A DNA stretch of 63,287 nucleotides, counting the filler, from Hyphochytrium catenoides (Eukaryota; Protista; Hyphochytriomycota), in NCBI GenBank assembly GCA_900088475.1. It is 9 parts of 9 records of this genome, joined end to end, with 100 filler letters (N's around TTAATTAATTAA, not from the genome) between each part and the next. Parts side by side here need not be neighbours in the genome. Positions count along the whole stretch, not along the records: positions 10,594 to 16,612 come from FLMG01002570.1; 8 more parts are not named here. One strand, given 5' to 3'. Position 1 is the stretch's first letter. Every line of letters begins with the position of its first letter. The translations under genes were made by a program, and so were the position numbers. Positions 10,900 to 26,531 of this stretch are shown piece after piece. The notes below the pieces were generated by a model that was given only the letters and a program-made list of their open reading frames with translations, was not told the DNA's origin and made no database searches.

Positions 10900-12840
10900 T
10901 AGAGACAACAACCCTTTGACTAACTAGCGCCGTCCTTATTAGTGGTAGTTTCTTCTATAAAAAGTCAGTGTTCCTGCCGCAGCCAAAGGGTCATTCTTGG
11001 AGAGTGGTGGCGAGACTTTTCTAATAAAACAAGCATGACGCCAATCCCACTGCCTCTTATTGAGGTGAGCCTACGATCACTCGTCAGGTCGAATCGTATG
11101 AGGTGTTTCTGTCCCTTCTAGTAACAGATCTTGCTCGTCAGACGCCCATGGCTCATTATGGAGCTAAGGTCTGGCTGCTGCTCTTCAGTTTCCTCCCCGG
11201 GTCAGAACGGTATCAGATGGGGTGATAAGGGAAGATCTCTTTCCGTGGCCAACTGTACTTCCCTTGTCACCCTCTCGCTCAGCTTGAGCTTAAACAAGGA
11301 GAAGAAGGCAGAACGTAAGGAGGACAAGGTCGGGGCTAAGCCTTCTGCCATGGGGGCGATGTAGCTTTATGAGGAAACTAAAGATAAACAGAGAGGGACC
11401 CAACTCCAACAAGTGGCCACCCAGACCGGTGATGACAAGAAGTGCAGAAAAGCTTGGGGTTGAGGTGGACGGCAGAAGAGAATAGACAAAGATTCAATAA
11501 TAGTAACTTCGAAGAAGGTAGCATCCCCATGTCAGAAAATGAGAAGAACGCGGCGACAAAAGGATTTAGCGGGAGTAAGCTAAGATGTGGCCAGATGGGT
11601 CTTCCACCTTTCTATCTCGTATGATGTCAGCTGTAAGGTTGAGGGAAGATTTGTCTCTGAGATGGAAGGATTGACGGCTGGCGGTAAACCTCGCGTTCCT
11701 CTTGGAGCAGGGCCCACGATCTAACCTGATCTACTACCATTCGATGACACTTTCCTTTACCACCATGATGATCATCACTCTTCCATAACGAGCTGCTACT
11801 TAGTAGTAGGGTACATGCATTAACAAGAAGCCGAGTAAGTGAACGTGAGGACAGTGCAGAGGGGCCGAGTGTTCGCAGCAGCACCAATAGTAAACAGGAA
11901 CCCAGCTCCCTAGTGAAAAATGAGGAAAGCAAAGATATCGTCGAAGAATATTGGAACAGAGAAGCAGCAAGACCTGATCTCTTTAAAGGAAAAATGAGGA
12001 GACAGCGTAGTACCTAGCGGAAGAATATCTGTTCTGAGAGAAGCGACACAAATCAATGTAAGCGTCTAACAGCTCAATTTTGGGAAAGAGGGGTCATAGA
12101 AAGGCAAGGGTGCTCGACATGGAAGCTCCAGGCGAACCACCTGAAGTCCAAACTCCAGGAAGTTGCTTTGACGACGGTGTTGTCGGGAGCAACAACAAGA
12201 CAGAGGGAGAAGGATCTGTTGATACTATTATCAGAATAAACGGCTCACCCCGACCCAGCAGCAGTCGGTATCTATTCTAGCCAACAGCTCTCATCTTGTC
12301 TCGCTTCTTTGGTCCTCTCGTCTCCTCTCCTTTCGATTCTTCTTTTTGTTCAGATACCCCATGCCGCCCCGCCCCTGCTAGCGGACAGAGTATATGAGCA
12401 ACTAGCGTTATGTTAAGGTTAGCTGTACTGACATGCAGCAACAGCGCCGCCCGTCACAGTTTCTCCTACTACGCATGCTTTATCCTTGTTTACGCCGTTA
12501 CCATTCTTTCTCCACTCATTGTCTTGTGCCTGCGTTGCTTGTCTTTCCTACTGTCTCGCTTCCGTGTCGAAGCAGTCCTCTCGTTATGATTGCACATTGT
12601 TGTCCTGAACAGGAAGGTCACTAACATTGGCATCTGCTTGCTACGAATGGCGGCGAAGGGCCTTTCAAAATTCTTTCTCTTTTTTCTGCTCCCTTCTCTG
12701 AACTTTCCTCCTACGTTGCACGTCTCTTTCAACGTTGCACAGCTCTTTCAACTCCTCTCTTCCCTACTTTATTTACGATCGCAGTGCAATGATGGTCTCC
12801 ATTAGCTCTCTTATGCAGATTACACTGTCACTGAAGCTTC
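10900..12840 (+). mobile_element. Degenerate L1/Tx1-type LINE ORF2 fragment (endonuclease to mid-RT); left arm of palindrome
   Basis: Decayed motifs occur in canonical order: GGD (~11352), RIxR (~11560), WRxNLAFLL (~11679), NGSPRPSSSRYLF (~12239, cf. KSPGPDG...F), and an NG-like segment (~12790). Many stops and frameshifts; left boundary approximate. Confidence 0.6.
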
Positions 12841-12849
12841 TTTCCGGCT

Positions 12850-15767
12850 GCAGAAGCATCTGTCGGTCTTGTTGTCGGTGTGCCTATAGTATTGTGCGTG
12901 ACAGAGCTGATGGAGACCATTGTACTGCTGGATGTAGAGTAGGGAAGAGATGAGTTGGAAGAAGAGCCGTACAACGGCCAAGGGAGACAGCTGTATCCAG
13001 AGAAATTCAAAAAGAAGACTTGCGGCGCAAGTAGTAGTAGCACAGAATCTTCGCGAGTGGTGGAACAGCTTCGCCAGACCAACGATGACTGTAGGAAAGA
13101 GAGGCAATGCAGGCAAAAGGGACCCAGTGGAGACAGAAGAGTAGCGGTGTAGACCAGACGAATGACAAATCGGGGCAAGACTCTGTCTCACTCCTGTCGA
13201 TCCTCGGCCTGTGGACTGCATGTTACTACCGTTAACCTTAATTATATCGCGCTATTCGCCCACATCGTCTGTCCGTCATCAGGGACAGCAAGAAGGGAGG
13301 ACTCAAAAAGCAAGAGTCGGAAACGCGAGGAGGCGATAGGAGAAACGAAGCCAGTGGAGGGCGGAAAAATGATCAGAGTTGCTTATAATAGATGCGGATT
13401 GCCGCCGGGTCAGCCGAACAAAGCAAACAGATCCTTCTTGTTGCTGCCAACGACGCTGTTGGACAACGGAGGCTCTTGACTACCGCTCTCAGTCCTTCAC
13501 TGTCGGATGCACCAGCATCGAAGCAAGGTCAAGACGTCGCTTCACCTGGAGCTTCCTCTTCGAGCACCATTGCCTTTCTATGGCTCTGTTCCCCAAATTG
13601 AGCTGTTGACTCTTACATTCCCTCTGTCTAGATCTCTCCAAACAGTTCCTCTAGGTATTACCCTGTCTCCTCACCTTTCTTCGCAGTGATAAGGAATAAG
13701 GCCTTGCTGCCTCTCTTAACGATAGTCTCCAACCTTCTGTTTGGTTGACTCATTTTTCACTGCGAGTTGATGGATGCTTCTTGTTCGATGCTGCTCCGAA
13801 CACTTGGCCTCTCTGCATTGTCCTGATGACGTCCACTTCATCGGCCTCTCTCTCTGCATCCAATCTGTTGCATGCACTTTATTAAGGCTCTGGGAAAATA
13901 ATGATCATGGTAGTATTGAAGAGTGTGCTTGAATGGATGAAGATCTGTGTGAGAGCTTAACTTAGATGAGCTCTAGGAGGATGCGACATAAAGGACATAG
14001 CGGCCTCCTGGGTCTCCTCCAAGAGGAACGCGAGGTTACTGAAAGACGTTTTGGTCTGCCACTTCTGAGACAGATCTTCCCACAGCCTTACTGCTGGCGA
14101 CATACCTCCTCCTCCAACCCCGACTATCATATCTAGAGGTTATTGCTCAGGAGGACGATCACTGAAGAGAGCGCGGTGACCCTTTGCTAGTCACTCTGGC
14201 ACTGACTCCAGGATCTATAAGAGAGTAGTGCCCGTCACCCTCATAGTAGACAGCAGGTGCCAAATAGTCACCTACTCTTATAAGAGCAGTGGCCTATAAT
14301 AGCTCGCCAATCTAGAGTTAGGCCCCAGGATCAATGAGCGAAGTGGCCAGCTTCCCGTCACTCTTCCCTTGGGCCCCAGTACGATATGGAGGTGGTTGAT
14401 GGCCTTCTTAAATGGAAAGACCGGCAGAGCTCAAGCGACGCGACACTCTCAACAACACCTGCTGCTGAAGATGGAAGAAAAAGAAGAGTGGTTCAAAGGA
14501 ATTTGGCCAGAGGAGACGTAGTGCTGTCCGGACCAGCAGCAAGACCTTGGCTCCAATGATAAGCCATGACCTTCGGTTGAGAAAAGTCTGTTAGGTCTCC
14601 AATTTGAAGGAGAGTTCATAGAAGGCAATAGTCTTCGTCGACGTGAATGTTCCAGGTATAGCCGCTCAGGACTAACTTCTGAGACTTGATGACACTGCTG
14701 GTGCATCTGAGACTAACGGACTGACTGATAGTACGATCGAGGCGTCTCTTCTTGCTCTCATTTATTAAGAAGGTCCTGCTTGATTATTCTATTTAGATAT
14801 GGCCAGCTCAGCAACAAACCAGATTAGACCAAGTCAAAGCCCTTCACGCGGGCCAAATGCCGGTTTCTACTAGTAGGTTGACGAGGTGCGAGTCTGATGT
14901 ATTGAGTAACCAGGGCCTTTCGCCTCTCTCCTCTCCACGTATGAAGCATCTGGCCATAACTCATCAGTCTCAAGTGCGCGCGCCTCTAATCATCATGTTT
15001 CTAAGATTCATGTCAAGTAGGTTCAAGTGGGGAGCTTCCTTTCATTTATGTTCTAGTCTCTCCTGGTTGTTAATGAAGCAGAGGTCTCTGCCTCCTCACC
15101 CAACGGCCTCTCCTACTCTACACGATATCTCCAATCTTCGTTATGGGTTTGCCCTATCTCGTGCTAGTTGTCCTGTCTCTCTTGCAAAATGTTTGCTGGC
15201 ACCGGCGATGTCTCTGTCTCTTTTTCTTTGACATAAGTAATCCCTTTAGCCCACTGGTTTGCTTTTCTCGTCACTCAGCATCATCGTGCTGAGCTCCTCT
15301 TGACGCAGCCAAAACTTGCCTACGGTTGCCGTCTTGTCGGTTTTTCTATTCCCCTTCTCCTCTCTTCGAGAGAAGATCAAAACAAGAGAGTTTTCTAGAT
15401 GAAGACAGAGGGAGAAGTGGTGCTATATGGAAGGTGGACAGATTAAGGACAACAGAGCTGCTAATTAGTAGTAATGACGATGCCAGGTAAAGGAAAGTAA
15501 GTGGAGAAAGTAAGGAAGAAAGACACCAGGAAAGTTCCGCTGCGCTATGTACAACTACTAACGCTTGCCTTCGCCCGCCCGGCACTGAAGCCAAGCAAGC
15601 GCCACCACACGCCGCCACCTGCGCCCACCCAGTACTGATCGACCGCACGCATACTTATTACCTCCTAGCAGCAGCAACAGCAGCAGCAACAGCAGCAGTA
15701 GCAAGAGCAGCAGCAGCAACAGCGGCAGCAGCAACAGCGGCAACAGCAGCAACAGCGCCGACAGCAT

Positions 15768-15805
<38 letters not shown>

Positions 15806-15930
15806 ACAGCAACAACAGCAGCAACAGGGCAGCTGGGCCTGGGTGACGGCGGGGCGGCGGAGCGAGGACTGAGTTTGAAAGGTCATCGTCTGTCTCCTCC
15901 GTTGTGAGGACGGCGCCTTTCTCTTTCATT
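12850..15930 (-). mobile_element. Degenerate L1/Tx1-type LINE (ORF1 remnant, endonuclease, RT N-terminal half); right arm of palindrome
   Basis: Minus strand shows TGWAQVAA (ORF1 SYA/SWAxVAA-type motif, ~15620), ETGQLARD (decayed zinc knuckle, ~15165), VKGF and QEET (endonuclease start, ~14850-14745), NLAFLL (~14030) and VIVGLAKLFHH...YNG (cf. D..KAFD...NG) in ORF 12820..13221. Confidence 0.62.
15665..15826. repeat. Imperfect (CAG/CAA)n trinucleotide tract
   Basis: About 54 triplets of cag/caa/cgg; lies inside the LINE ORF1 remnant. Confidence 0.9.
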
Positions 15931-17966
15931 AGACGCAGAGCGATGACTGAGTCCCAAGCATGTCCCTAATATTATCTATGGGATTCGGTACTACTGCTGC
16001 CTCACTGGACCTTCGGTCTTTCTGCTGCATCTTTCCCATGATCTAACCCATATTATACGCCTACTAAATCCGCACTCTGTCTCTCTCGAACCGATCTACT
16101 GTACGAAAAAGGGGTCCTAGGTAAAAACTTTATGCATCAAACCCCCCAGAAGGCTAAGATACTTGCAGATTTGTATAATTACCTATGCCAATTAGACAGA
16201 GCGACAGAAGCCCTAAACTTCAAGCAGCGGAGATGACTAAAGAGATACTTGATGCGATATCTAAAAGTACTTGGGAAGAAACAGAAGACGATCTTATCCC
16301 GAACCGACGCCAGACAGAGTAGCAAAGACCCTATGGCCTATTCAGACAAGGAATACGACTAGATATTTCGCAAATTGGGACAAGACTAAGATCAAAGGTT
16401 CCAGACAGAGTCTCCAAGAGTAGCATGTCTATATGGTATTAAAGGTGTAATGGCACAAGACAGAGTGGTAACGATGTGCTTGAAGAAGTCTAATGGAGAT
16501 CTGAAAGGTTTCATACGTAGCACCGACCGGCTGACGGACAGCACGAAGATCGGAGTGGAAAGAGAGAGAGAGAGAAAGAAAGAGAGGAAGAAAGAGAGAG
16601 AAAGAAAGAGAGNNNNNNNNNNNNNNNNNNNNNNNNNNNNNNNNNNNNNNNNNNNNTTAATTAATTAANNNNNNNNNNNNNNNNNNNNNNNNNNNNNNNN
16701 NNNNNNNNNNNNATCTCTCCCGGCGTGATCTCAGTGTCCCTACCCTCGATCGGTTGCTCGAGAAGCGATGAACCAAGTCAGTCAGTCAGTCACTTCCATA
16801 CCATCCTCAGAAGCAGCAGGTTGGTTGACTTGGTGACTGGAGAGAGAGCGATCATGGCAGCTCGCTGTCATCTCTCCTCCAGTTGAAGTTTGTGCCTGAG
16901 AGATGCTGGCGCCCTTGCCATCACACAGCATGAAGCACTCTGTCTCTTCCTTCTCCCGTCAGTTTTTTCAACGAAAGACCAATATCGTAGGATAGCGGGT
17001 AACGGATTCTATATCCTTACTTATTCCGCCCGGTGGAGGTAATTAGCGGCTTTAATTGCCGTTCCTCCTGATCGTATTCTCCTATATGACCCCGTGAAGG
17101 ATCCTGGCATGGGATCCAGTTTCTACTGTTTCTGTGGGTCTCTCTCTCTCTCTCTGTCTCTCTCTTTCTTTCTCTCTTTCTCTCTCTCTCTCTGTCTCTC
17201 TCTGTCTCTCTTTTCTCTCTCTCTGTCTCTCTGTCTCTCTGTCTCTCTGTCTCTCTGTCTCTCTGTCTCTCTGTCTCTGTCTCTCTGTCTCTCTGTCTCT
17301 GTCTCTCTGTCTCTCTGTCTCTCNNNNNNNNNNNNNNNNNNNNNNNNNNNNNNNNNNNNNNNNNNNNNNNNNNNNNNNNNNNNNNNNNNNNNNNNNNNNN
17401 NNNNNNNNNNNNNNNNNNNCTTCCTGTCTGGGTTTCCCAACCACTTTCTTCTGTCAGTCTCTGCGTCTCCAGCACCTTGGCGCCCTTATTAATTATCTCT
17501 TTCTGTCTCTGAGCCTTCCTCTCTCCACCTGCTCATGTCACTCTGACTGCTTCAGCCTCCAGCCTGCCTTGTCAGGCTCGGCCAGCTGATTTTCCCAACC
17601 TTGTTAATCGCCCCTAGTCACTAAGGTCAGCACTACTAACCGCCAGGTAGATTGCCAGAACTGAAGCTGCTTCTCATTACAGCAGACGTTCGCTGCCTTC
17701 AGCAGCAGCAGCAGCAGGTCAGAGAGGAGAAGCGACTCAGAGAAAGAGGAGAGATAGCAGAGAGGCAGAGGAAGATCTCAAGAGGAACGGCACGATGGGA
17801 GCTCAGCTCAGCACACAACGGCAGCTCGTGATCGGAGGTGTCCTCCTCCATCTAGCGGTGATCGCCNNNNNNNNNNNNNNNNNNNNNNNNNNNNNNNNNN
17901 NNNNNNNNNNTTAATTAATTAANNNNNNNNNNNNNNNNNNNNNNNNNNNNNNNNNNNNNNNNNNNN

Positions 17967-23704: not shown

Positions 23705-26531
23705 GAATGTCGTGGTAAAGAGACAGATCAACCACTGCGTCGCCACCAGCTCCAGCGGAAGCCCCGTAAGTGCGGCATGGTGGTCAATGGCAGGCAATCG
23801 ACTCCGAATGAGCTCCTTAAGGACGCGCATATCCGCTTGCGTGTCTATCATTGTAGGCGTATAGTAACCAGGGTTTATGTCTTCGCAGATGGTCGCTAAG
23901 AGCCAGAATGTGGTCTCCTCCTCCATGGAAACTAACAAGAAGCCTGCAATAAAGTTCATGCCTTGGCAGTAGCCCACTGTGGAATTATGCAGCGCGTAGG
24001 CCATTAAGATGCGAGCAAGCTTCTCTCGTCCGTCCAGAGTGTTTGTACGCGTCTTGGCGCTGCCAAACGTGCGGTTGATATCCAGCTCAATCTGTCTTTT
24101 GACCGTGTCATCCAACTCAGTTGCCGTTCTCTTTACAAGAGAGCGATAATAGTGCTCTGGCTTCTCGTTGATCTTACAATCGGCTCCTGAGAGCTTGAGG
24201 TACATCGTCTCCCGCAGGTGGCGAGGTATGCCTTGCCATACCAGGCGACGGAGAACCGAACGAGAAGAGCGTGACGAAGTTGTTGATGAGGAGGAGTGAG
24301 AGCCGCTCTTGTTATGGATGCTCTCAAAAGTTGGGCCTACGAGATGACACGACAGGAAACGCGGTCAGAGCTGTTTCGAAGGTGTGGACGGGCTAAGCGC
24401 CAAGGAGAGGATAAACAGTGACATTGCGCTAACGGGTCAAGAGAGCTATTTTCAAAGGACGAGGTGAACTGGGACTCCGAGCAAAAAAGGGGCTGAAAAC
24501 CAACGGAGACGAACGTCTGTGTGATGTCAGAGGAGATACCGCGCAGTTGTCTCTCCAAAAGACATCTAGTGAGCGAGAGAGGAAGAGGGAGAAGAAGGAG
24601 CACAGGAGATGCTATCTTATCACCTCAGCACTAGACAATTGACTCGCAAGAGAAAGCGTAAGAACAAGGGAACGAGGTACTAGAAAGTCAGAGCACAGAG
24701 AGAGAGCGATGCGTGCGATAAAAGGCATACACAGGGCCCTACCATTCTGTAAGTATCTGTCCCAGTTCTCAATTTGTCTCCTCTCTCTACATTGAAGGTA
24801 GGACTGAAGGTGAAGCCACTGCTGACGGGCTTCTCTCGGTATCTTGAACCCATAGAAGTCATACATAATCTCACACTCCTTCTCTCCTTCTCTCTCCTGT
24901 TGCCATTCCTCCGCAGTCTGACAATCGAGCGGAGGATGGAGAGGGTCTTCTATGTAAAACGTCCTAATACGTATTTCTCCTGTTGAGACTCCTGCTAGAG
25001 AGTACCAGCTATCATTCACAGGAGAGGAAGAGAAACAAAGAGAAGTTAGAGGGAGAGAGACACTTCCTAGTGCCTCATCCACAGTTATAAGCCCGTTTGA
25101 CCCTCGTCTTAGCGCCATCTCCCCGCCTCCTCCTCTCTCTCCCGACCCAGAGGGCTTTGGACTTGCAAAGCTCGACCTGCCCACCACACGGCCAGAGGAG
25201 GAAGATGAGACAGTTACGACGTCCGTCCCATTTGGAGACCAGAAGGAGGAGAAATCTTCAACTTCTCCTGAAGCTTCAAACATATCAAAAACGTAGTTGC
25301 TCTCGTTATACACTTCTACATGAAGAGCTTGCGGCCGCGAAGCGGCAGACGAGGCAGAAGAGAGATCAAGGCGAAAGCTGGAACCAAAGGCTGGATTGCA
25401 GTCTCCACAGAGCGTAGACGTTCTATAAGCTGCATCCCCCAGCTTTACCACGGCGTAGGGATCTGGGTAACGAGAGGAAGAGAACCAGTTGCTCTCCAAG
25501 TTCCTTGCCTGTATAACCTCTACGACCAGGTGCCCCGTCGGGGAGGAGAGAGAAAGTGAAGAAAGAGAAGCACGCGACCCTGCTCTCGATCCCGAGGAGC
25601 GTCCGGCCGTGGGCGAGCCCTCAAATAGCTTTCTCTTGAGTGGAGAGCGGTACCCTGCGGCTTGTCTGTTCCTTTCTCTGAGAAGCTGGGCGGCTCCTCC
25701 TTTGGCAGGGCCTGAGAGTGATGAAGAGGAACTGGTGGGTGCCTCTGACTCTACTCTCTCATAGCGAGTGACGTCTCGTTTGCTCCTGTACGCCGCTTTC
25801 GGTCCGTCACTGATCTCCATCACAATCTCAGTAAAGCTGGAGGTCCTCTCTTCTCTCTCTCCCCCGCTTGAGACCCTTGGCACAGTGCTGGGCCCTACGA
25901 CAGGCTTTCGAGGCGATATGGGCGGAGGCATACCGTTCAACGAGGAGAGAGGAAGCGAGAACCTTTCTCTCCGCCATGAGGAGCTTCCCCGAGCGTAGTC
26001 TTCTCCTTCCTCCCCTCGTCCTGCCGCGCCCGCCGTGTTTCTTCGTCTCTGCTTCGTCTTCTCTACACTTTTCAAGAATTGCAGAGCCTTAAGCGGGCTT
26101 TGGCCAGTAAGCGAGCCGGTAGAATAGTTCCTCTGCAAGCCGCCTCCGTTGCTGTCTTCTCTCTCTTTCTCTGCTCTCTCTATCTCCATCCTCTCTTCGC
26201 GTCTCTCTACTCGTCGTCTCAAGATATGGTTGTCGCTGGCTCGTCTGTGGAGCGAGCCCTCTCTCTCGGGGAAGGCACCACCATTATCACGTCTTCCTTG
26301 CACAGGGTAAGGCGGCGGCATCCGCAAACTGTCGTGATTTCTACTCATGAAAGCTGAAGAGAGGGAAGAGGAAGAAGCGCTACTTCCAGTCACCCTTGAG
26401 ATGCTTGGGTCTCGGTGTTCCAGAGGTAGATCGCTCTGGTTCGGGCTCTGGTCAGAAGGTAAAGGACAAAGAGCGACAGAAAAGGGAGAGGGGTTAAGGT
26501 AGGGGCGCCGAGAGAGAGAGAGAGAGGAGAA

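What the first reader, a model, noticed from the sequence alone, without database searches (positions are those of the whole stretch)
11120..14590. ~3.5-kb nearly spacer-less degenerate palindrome made from a LINE folded back inside its RT
Seen: colinear reverse-complement matches with a near-constant coordinate sum (~25.65-25.72 kb): 11146-11180/14534-14569, 11687-11707/14017-14037 (21/21 identical), ~11855-11885/~13790-13820, 12068-12135/~13543-13607, ~12525-12580/~13062-13118 and ~12748-12808/~12903-12958, converging on ~12845. The arms are substantially diverged. Both read as endonuclease-to-RT of an L1/Tx1 element ending at the same RT position, which favours one fold-back duplication over two insertions. 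Established analogy: maize Mu killer is an inverted duplication of a partial transposon whose hairpin RNA silences the family. Inference: a fossil hairpin-RNA 'killer' locus against a LINE family.
Basis: partly seen in the sequence, partly recalled or inferred. Interest (0 to 1): 0.75.

Follow-up and report, generated by a model that had tools for sequence, protein, structure and literature searches.

The report
Old non-coding palindrome, not a LINE

Summary
Positions 11121-14593 form a colinear, almost spacer-less inverted repeat (self-BLAST E 9e-124). Homology can be followed to a 12-nt loop at 12841-12852. In alignable blocks the arms are about 75% identical. Two islands, 425/420 nt and 145/97 nt, show no similarity at all.

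The LINE reading fails. All 83 stop-free pieces of at least 33 aa, in six frames, give no reverse transcriptase, endonuclease or other transposon domain in Pfam. No frame contains a YxDD motif. Stop density is at the random level in every frame. Arm differences show no codon periodicity, and most indels are not multiples of three. A HMMER scan of the longest piece against 1.84 billion proteins found nothing.

New finding: a third, older partial copy (14597-14787) abuts the right end. With it as outgroup the two arms are sisters, which fits one fold-back duplication.

No relatives turned up in any collection I could search, and the source organism is unknown (eukaryote-like, not vertebrate-like).

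Most likely this is an old local fold-back duplication of repeated non-coding DNA that is now decaying. A hairpin-RNA function cannot be tested here, and nothing specific supports it. Interest is low.

The parts
11121..12840 (+). Left arm of the palindrome
   Evidence: Self-BLAST minus-strand HSPs and global arm alignment. No protein domain in any frame.
12841..12852 (.). Central loop (TTTCCGGCTGCA), closed by a 9-of-11 stem 12830-12840/12853-12863
   Evidence: Read from the sequence and the arm alignment. The 65 nt between the last strong arm pair (I5) still contain this short stem.
12853..14593 (-). Right arm of the palindrome (reverse complement of the left arm)
11846..12145 (+). Best-conserved block of the left arm (partner 13531-13825). 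It peaks at 85% identity around 12059-12118.
   Evidence: Sliding identity; z = 62-67 against shuffles.
11186..11610 (.). Island A, left: no similarity to its mirror position 14110-14529, although the lengths nearly match (425 vs 420 nt)
   Evidence: Local and global alignment z = -0.4 to -1.9, and no direct-orientation similarity either. Base composition differs: A+G is 0.60 on the left and 0.46 in the reverse-complemented right island.
14110..14529 (.). Island A, right
12561..12705 (.). Island C, left (145 nt): no significant similarity to its mirror 12985-13081 (97 nt)
   Evidence: z = 0.4 to 1.7.
12985..13081 (.). Island C, right
14597..14787 (+). Third, more diverged partial copy (F) of the segment at left arm 12068-12250 / right arm 13419-13610. 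It directly abuts the right end of the palindrome and is inverted relative to the right arm.
   Evidence: blastn 13489-13600 vs 14724-14600. nhmmer E 1.5e-5 against the right arm and 0.009 against the left. Three-way alignment A2. z = 8.3 and 6.3. In the core, L-R 84%, L-F 57%, R-F 61%.
10802..10831 (-). Possible fourth scrap of the same block (matches 12127-12157 at 84% over 31 nt); weak
   Evidence: I14; z = 5.7. Too short to be sure.

Best explanation
This is an old, in-place fold-back (hairpin or template-switch) inverted duplication of about 1.7 kb of non-coding DNA. That DNA was already part of a local repeat, because an older partial copy sits right next to it. The duplication produced a palindrome with essentially no spacer. 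Since then the arms have decayed: about 25% mismatch in alignable blocks, many 1-2-nt indels, and two segments with no remaining similarity. The patchiness with preserved colinearity is best explained by a past period of arm-to-arm gene conversion that stopped at different times in different segments; this step is inferred, not shown. The element encodes no protein and is not a LINE. Today it is most likely a neutral relic. If transcribed through, it would fold into a long but very imperfect hairpin.
For: The arms are colinear, with E 9e-124 and block z-scores of 11-67. Homology is traceable to a 12-nt loop closed by a short stem, as expected when a short inverted repeat primes a fold-back. 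The arms are sisters relative to the adjacent third copy (23 vs 6 vs 3 informative sites). The arms are non-coding: no Pfam domain in 83 pieces, random stop density and no YxDD, ts:tv 97:147, 36 of 53 gap runs not a multiple of 3, no codon periodicity, tblastx alike in all frames, and no protein relatives. Divergence is far beyond sequencing or assembly error, and the non-homologous islands argue against a chimeric-read artefact. The central 1500 nt fold as one long imperfect hairpin, -633 kcal/mol. The longest perfect arm-to-arm run is only 21 nt, and 1094 of 1998 alignment columns match.
Against: Only one locus could be studied. No other copy and no source genome were found, so a mobile origin cannot be excluded. 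Uniform neutral decay does not predict 75-85% blocks next to equal-length islands with zero similarity, and the gene-conversion explanation for that is inference. The same pattern would arise from constraint on the blocks, or from two modular members of one repeat family. The third copy (and a possible fourth scrap) shows the sequence is repeated, which also fits a transposon.
Confidence: 0.55

Rival explanations
1. The palindrome is a non-autonomous foldback-type or long-TIR DNA transposon, or two head-to-head copies of one. On this view the palindromic shape belongs to the element, and the conserved outer 60 nt are transposase-binding ends.
For: The outermost 60 nt (11122-11183/14531-14593, 76%) are conserved directly next to a 425-nt non-homologous island, like terminal repeats flanking a variable interior. 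The ends read TA|ACAGA...TCTGT|TA, which would allow a TA target-site duplication. A third partial copy and a possible fourth scrap show the sequence is repeated. A weak ~75-nt sub-repeat lies in 11912-12060 (D8, D14).
Against: TA is itself palindromic, so it cannot be told apart from the repeat, and no longer duplication flanks the ends. No transposase remnant was found in any frame. The outer block is no better conserved than the inner blocks. There are no tandem sub-repeat arrays of the kind that define Drosophila FB ends. No other copy was found in any searchable collection, though those collections hardly cover eukaryotic genomes.
Confidence: 0.25
2. It is a functional long hairpin-RNA (hpRNA or proto-miRNA-like) locus. 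The conserved blocks would be kept complementary by selection for pairing, the islands would be unpaired bulges, and small RNAs from it would silence a gene or repeat elsewhere.
For: Equal-length islands with zero similarity lie between well-matched blocks, which suggests constraint on arm-to-arm complementarity. The central 1.5 kb folds into a single long hairpin. The best-conserved block recurs in a third copy that could be a target-like sequence.
Against: Mismatches that would still allow G:U pairing are not enriched on either strand: 53 and 44 of 244, against about 48 expected from the transition count. The longest perfect duplex is 21 nt, or 28 with wobble pairs. The three copies of the best block share no conserved local structure. 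There is no Rfam match above threshold. No target and no expression data exist.
Confidence: 0.08
3. One reading: a LINE (L1/Tx1) folded back inside its reverse transcriptase, acting as a fossil Mu killer-like silencer of that LINE family.
For: The palindromic geometry is right, and a single fold-back event is favoured.
Against: No RT or endonuclease signal in 83 stop-free pieces at E up to 1-10. No YxDD in any frame and random stop density. No coding signature in arm divergence. The longest piece lies on the strand and at the position where the model puts RT, yet it has no relative among 1.84 billion proteins.
Confidence: 0.03
4. It is an assembly or sequencing artefact: a fold-back chimeric long read or an amplification chimera assembled as a palindrome.
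For: Spacer-less palindromes are a known chimera shape (my own knowledge; not tested here).
Against: Such artefacts give near-identical arms after consensus. Here identity is 61-75%, substitutions are frequent (244 in 1150 good columns) and two islands are wholly non-homologous.
Confidence: 0.03

Closest known systems
Fold-back inverted duplications / palindromes formed at hairpin-capped breaks or by template switching (Tetrahymena rDNA palindrome, yeast and mammalian palindromic amplification; my own knowledge)
   Same: The inverted duplication is spacer-less or nearly so. A short inverted repeat sits exactly at the centre. The arms are colinear and are each other's closest relatives.
   Different: The known examples are young, with near-identical arms, and usually belong to an amplification. 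This one is very old (about 25% mismatch in the best parts), small, and carries non-homologous islands.
Maize Mu killer (PMC3440606, abstract: partial inverted duplication of mudrA plus TIRA; a ~4-kb hairpin RNA from read-through transcription is proposed)
   Same: A palindrome of about 3.5-4 kb that could give a long hairpin RNA if transcribed from a flank.
   Different: Mu killer is made of an identifiable transposon, and its arms are similar enough to yield siRNAs against it. Here no transposon identity could be found, the arms match in only 1094 of 1998 alignment columns, and expression is unknown.
Drosophila hairpin RNA (hpRNA) loci (PMC10317233, PMC10292708)
   Same: A long inverted repeat able to fold into a hairpin. 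Such loci arise by inverted duplication of the sequence they later silence.
   Different: hpRNAs are defined by endo-siRNA production and an identifiable target gene. Neither can be shown here, and the arm complementarity is much lower than I would expect of a working hpRNA (my own judgement).
Foldback (FB) transposons and other long-TIR non-autonomous DNA elements (my own knowledge)
   Same: Mostly inverted-repeat structure with little or no central unique DNA, no coding capacity, and the sequence present in more than two copies locally.
   Different: No tandem sub-repeat arrays in the arms, no unambiguous target-site duplication, and no dispersed copies demonstrated.
Sex-chromosome palindromes maintained by arm-to-arm gene conversion (my own knowledge)
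   Same: Gene conversion between arms would explain blocks of different identity with strict colinearity.
   Different: Those palindromes are tens of kb to Mb long, more than 99.9% identical, contain genes and have spacers. This one is 3.5 kb, non-coding and decayed.

Membership tests
LINE (L1/Tx1-type) fragment | Reverse-transcriptase domain (Pfam RVT_1) detectable in translation | tested here: not met
   83 stop-free pieces of at least 33 aa from all six frames of 11000-14700 gave no RVT hit at E up to 1; the 20 longest were also scanned at E up to 10. No YxDD-like motif in any frame.
LINE (L1/Tx1-type) fragment | Apurinic-type endonuclease domain (Exo_endo_phos) towards the 5' side | tested here: not met
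   No such hit in any piece.
LINE (L1/Tx1-type) fragment | Residual coding signature (stop depletion in one frame, codon-periodic divergence, in-frame indels) | tested here: not met
   38-61 stops per 1173 codons in all six frames, against about 55 expected. No periodicity, and 36 of 53 gap runs are not a multiple of 3. tblastx scores are similar in all frames.
LINE (L1/Tx1-type) fragment | Nucleotide or profile match to a curated LINE consensus (Dfam/Repbase) and other genomic copies | not testable with these tools
   No repeat library or source genome is available. The protein searches found nothing.
Mu killer-type transposon-derived hairpin silencer | Arms are an inverted duplication of part of an identifiable transposon | tested here: not met
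   The inverted duplication is present, but no transposon protein or family was recognised.
Mu killer-type transposon-derived hairpin silencer | Read-through transcript and siRNAs matching the family | not testable with these tools
   No expression data are available.
hpRNA locus | Long inverted repeat predicted to fold as one hairpin | tested here: met
   12100-13599 folds as one long imperfect hairpin, MFE -633 kcal/mol. Any inverted repeat would do this.
hpRNA locus | Duplex quality sufficient for Dicer products, or signs of selection for pairing | tested here: inconclusive
   The longest perfect run is 21 nt, or 28 with G:U. Wobble-compatible mismatches are not enriched. The equal-length non-homologous islands are suggestive but ambiguous.
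hpRNA locus | Endo-siRNAs and a target with homology to the arms | not testable with these tools
   No small-RNA data and no source genome.
Foldback / long-TIR DNA transposon | Target-site duplication flanking the inverted termini | tested here: inconclusive
   Both ends can be read as TA|ACAG...CTGT|TA. TA is palindromic and may simply be part of the repeat. No longer direct repeat flanks the ends.
Foldback / long-TIR DNA transposon | Multiple dispersed copies with the same termini | not testable with these tools
   Only local extra copies were seen. Seed scans of the metagenome, prokaryote-genome and viral collections gave 0 hits.
Foldback / long-TIR DNA transposon | Arms built of tandem sub-repeats (FB type) | tested here: not met
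   Within the arms TRF finds a short 5-nt run (12313-12331) and a 2-copy 19-nt repeat (12713-12752), the latter in the left arm only. One weak ~75-nt duplication lies at 11912-12060.
In-place fold-back inverted duplication | Arms meet with no or minimal spacer at a short inverted repeat | tested here: met
   12-nt loop 12841-12852 closed by a 9/11 stem.
In-place fold-back inverted duplication | Arms are each other's closest relatives compared with other copies | tested here: met
   With copy F as outgroup: L=R 23, R=F 6, L=F 3 informative sites; L-R 84% against 57% and 61%. Only one outgroup copy and 74 columns.

The most novel reading that the evidence does not exclude
The well-matched blocks, separated by equal-length islands with zero similarity, are kept complementary by selection. 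On this reading the locus is a long-lived hairpin-RNA gene whose small RNAs act on the repeat family represented by the adjacent third copy. That would be an old non-coding hpRNA or proto-miRNA locus in an unidentified eukaryote, not a neutral relic.
Probability: 0.07. Interest if true: 0.5.

Novelty: new member of a known kind. Interest (0 to 1): 0.15.

Why it matters
The main value is as a correction. The palindrome is real, but the claim that made it interesting (a LINE folded back in its RT, acting as a fossil silencer) has no support in the sequence. What is left is an ordinary decaying inverted duplication of non-coding repeated DNA. Two features could repay a look once the source genome is known. 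First, strict colinearity coexists with islands of no similarity, which could come from gene conversion, constraint or modular repeats. Second, an older inverted copy abuts one end, which suggests a locus prone to repeated inverted duplication.

Tried and rejected
1. LINE or any transposon coding content: Pfam scans of the 20 longest pieces at E up to 10 and of all 83 pieces at E up to 1 gave only chance hits (best NAR2, E 0.0035, among 83 queries). A YxDD motif hunt found none.
2. Protein relatives: a word-indexed search with 11630-12013(-) gave 0 hits. A full HMMER scan with 12823-13251(-) gave 0 of 1.84 billion. An exact look-up of 10 ATG ORFs found none in the collection.
3. DNA relatives: the best-conserved seeds gave 0 hits in metagenome contigs (two scans), genome contigs (two scans) and viral contigs (one scan). 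These collections barely cover eukaryotic genomes, so this says little.
4. RIP-type mutation: rejected, ts:tv 97:147.
5. An inversion inside one arm as the cause of the islands: rejected, no direct-orientation similarity.
6. A structured RNA in the most conserved block: RNAalifold on the three copies, both strands, gave weak energies (-4.7 and -2.4 kcal/mol). Rfam gave nothing near threshold and there are no tRNAs.
7. My own visual lead that 16390-16611(+) looks like the start of a gypsy-type RT: not supported by Pfam or PDB searches.
9. Source organism: not identified. CpG observed/expected is 0.68 and AG/CT dinucleotides stand at 1.35. That is eukaryote-like and not vertebrate-like. I do not take the contig for human.
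Full report
**Observation**

The piece (10594-16612) contains a genuine inverted repeat. Among them are 11687-11710/14014-14037 (96%, with a 21-nt exact run), 12095-12136/13541-13582 (88%) and 12068-12086/13589-13607 (95%).

A sensitive self-BLAST joins the pairs into one minus-strand alignment, 11720-13954 (61% identity over 2406 columns, E 9e-124). Two outer segments follow: 11619-11707/14017-14105 and 11122-11183/14531-14593, both 76%. Coordinate sums stay within 25674-25724, so the arms are colinear.

A global alignment of the left arm against the reverse complement of the right arm traces homology inward to 12830-12840/12853-12863. That is a 9-of-11 stem around the 12-nt loop 12841-12852 (sequence).

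Composition-preserving shuffles give z = 11-67 for the alignable blocks. The CT/GA-rich composition of the region does not explain the match.

**Anatomy of the arms**

Identity is very uneven.
- The good blocks are 11121-11185, 11611-11715, 11846-12145 (peaking at 85%), 12296-12560 and 12706-12823, each with its mirror partner.
- In the 1150 well-aligned columns, ungapped identity is 75%.
- Two islands have no detectable similarity, inverted or direct: 11186-11610 vs 14110-14529 (425 vs 420 nt) and 12561-12705 vs 12985-13081 (145 vs 97 nt).
- The two A islands also differ in base composition.
- Because the A islands have nearly equal lengths, colinearity is preserved across them. Uniform neutral decay does not predict this pattern.

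**Is it a LINE? No sign of one**

I translated all six frames of 11000-14700 and took every stop-free piece of at least 33 aa (83 pieces).
- Pfam scans found no RVT_1, no Exo_endo_phos, no RNase H, integrase or transposase. The 20 longest pieces were scanned at E up to 10 and all 83 at E up to 1.
- The best hit (E 0.0035 for an unrelated family) is what 83 queries give by chance.
- No YxDD-like motif exists in any frame. Stop codons occur 38-61 times per 1173 codons in each frame, against about 55 expected at random.
- The longer open pieces lie on the pyrimidine-rich strand, where stop codons are rare by composition.
- Arm-to-arm differences show no codon periodicity. 36 of 53 gap runs are not multiples of three, and ts:tv is 97:147.
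- tblastx between the arms scores similarly in all frame combinations, as expected for DNA-level rather than protein-level similarity.
- The 128-aa piece 11630-12013(-) found nothing in the word-indexed protein search.
It has no relative among 1.84 billion representative proteins.

Both arms are non-coding as far as these tools can see.

**A third copy**

Directly abutting the right end lies a third, more diverged copy (F) at about 14597-14787 on the + strand. It corresponds to left arm 12068-12250 and right arm 13419-13610.
- Support: blastn, nhmmer E 1.5e-5 and 0.009, the alignment, and z = 8.3 and 6.3.
- In the 74-column core, L-R identity is 84%, against 57% (L-F) and 61% (R-F). Informative sites split L=R 23, R=F 6, L=F 3. 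The two arms are therefore sisters and F is an older relative.
- Just beyond that core R and F still resemble each other while L does not (e.g. the 31-nt stretch at columns 117-147 of alignment A2). This suggests L-specific change or replacement there.
- A possible fourth scrap (10802-10831, minus strand, 84% over 31 nt, z 5.7) is too short to trust.

So the sequence belongs to a local repeat, and the locus has undergone inverted duplication at least twice, or else holds several copies of one element.

**Relatives elsewhere**

I found none.
- Exact-seed scans with the best-conserved blocks gave 0 hits in metagenome contigs, prokaryotic genome contigs and viral contigs.
- Ten ATG ORFs are not in the protein collection.
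- Rfam and ARAGORN found nothing meaningful.
- The collections I could search hardly cover eukaryotic genomes, so this absence carries little weight.
- No stop-free stretch in the whole 6-kb piece exceeds 144 aa. CpG observed/expected is 0.68, and AG/CT dinucleotides are over-represented. This looks like eukaryotic non-coding DNA and is not vertebrate-like. I do not take it for human.

**Most likely explanation (confidence about 0.55)**

An old in-place fold-back duplication of about 1.7 kb of repeated non-coding DNA.
- Shown: the spacer-less centre with a short stem, the colinearity, the sister relationship of the arms, the lack of coding capacity, and the age (about 0.3 substitutions per site between arms in the best blocks, by Jukes-Cantor from 75% identity).
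- Inferred: the mechanism (a hairpin-capped break or template switch at the short central inverted repeat), and a period of arm-to-arm gene conversion ending at different times as the cause of the patchy identity.

Its present function is most likely none.

**Rivals**

- A foldback-type or long-TIR non-autonomous transposon (about 0.25). This would explain the conserved outer 60 nt next to a variable island, the possible TA flanks and the extra copies. However, the TA is ambiguous, the arms lack sub-repeat arrays, and no dispersed copies could be shown.
- A functional hairpin-RNA locus (about 0.08). The central 1.5 kb does fold into one long hairpin, and the island/block pattern could reflect selection for pairing. 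But G:U-compatible mismatches are not enriched, and the longest perfect duplex is 21 nt. The best block has no conserved local structure, and there are no expression data.
It is contradicted by every coding test above.
- An assembly chimera (about 0.03). It does not fit 61-75% identity with non-homologous islands.

**Comparison with known systems**

In geometry the locus resembles fold-back palindromes and Mu killer. The abstract of PMC3440606 describes Mu killer as a partial inverted duplication of mudrA, with a proposed ~4-kb hairpin RNA made by read-through transcription. The locus also resembles Drosophila hpRNA loci (PMC10317233, PMC10292708).

It fails the defining feature of a Mu killer-type locus, because no transposon can be identified in the arms. 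The defining features of hpRNAs (small RNAs and a target) cannot be tested here. It is best filed as one more decayed inverted duplication, a known kind.

**Verdict**

Of the interpretation, only the single fold-back event holds up. The LINE identity and the silencer inference are not supported. Interest is low (0.15).

Noticed in passing
window 15667-15827: An imperfect CAG/CAA trinucleotide array of about 160 nt (TRF periods 9 and 15, 78-79% matches). It reads as poly-Q, poly-Ala/Thr or poly-Ser on the + strand and poly-Leu on the - strand. No Pfam support for a gene around it.
   Followed up: partly
window 16561-16612: A GA-rich microsatellite (AGAG/AGAAAG units) runs to the right edge of the piece.
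   Followed up: no
window 10594-10660: The piece starts with an A11 run and several AATAAA-like motifs in an AT-rich stretch (38% GC). This could be the 3' end of something cut by the piece's edge.
   Followed up: no
window 12713-12752: A 19-nt tandem duplication (ACGTTGCACAGCTCTTTCA, 2.1 copies, 90%) is present only in the left arm. The right arm has one copy, so the duplication arose after the arms separated.
   Followed up: partly
window 11912-12060 (mirror 13640-13761): A weak duplication of about 75 nt inside the best-conserved block (GAAAAATGAGGA... and GAAGAATAT... motifs repeated 74-77 nt apart). It is present in both arms, so it predates the palindrome.
   Followed up: no
window 11194-13893: Alternating purine-rich and pyrimidine-rich strand blocks (GC and AT skew of +/-0.2-0.3) mirror each other across the centre. 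This skew explains the longer stop-free stretches on the pyrimidine-rich strand.
   Followed up: partly
window 16390-16611 (+): By eye, a stretch (...KKSNGDLKGF...) recalled the start of a gypsy-type reverse transcriptase. Pfam and PDB sequence searches gave no support, so it is probably chance.
   Followed up: yes
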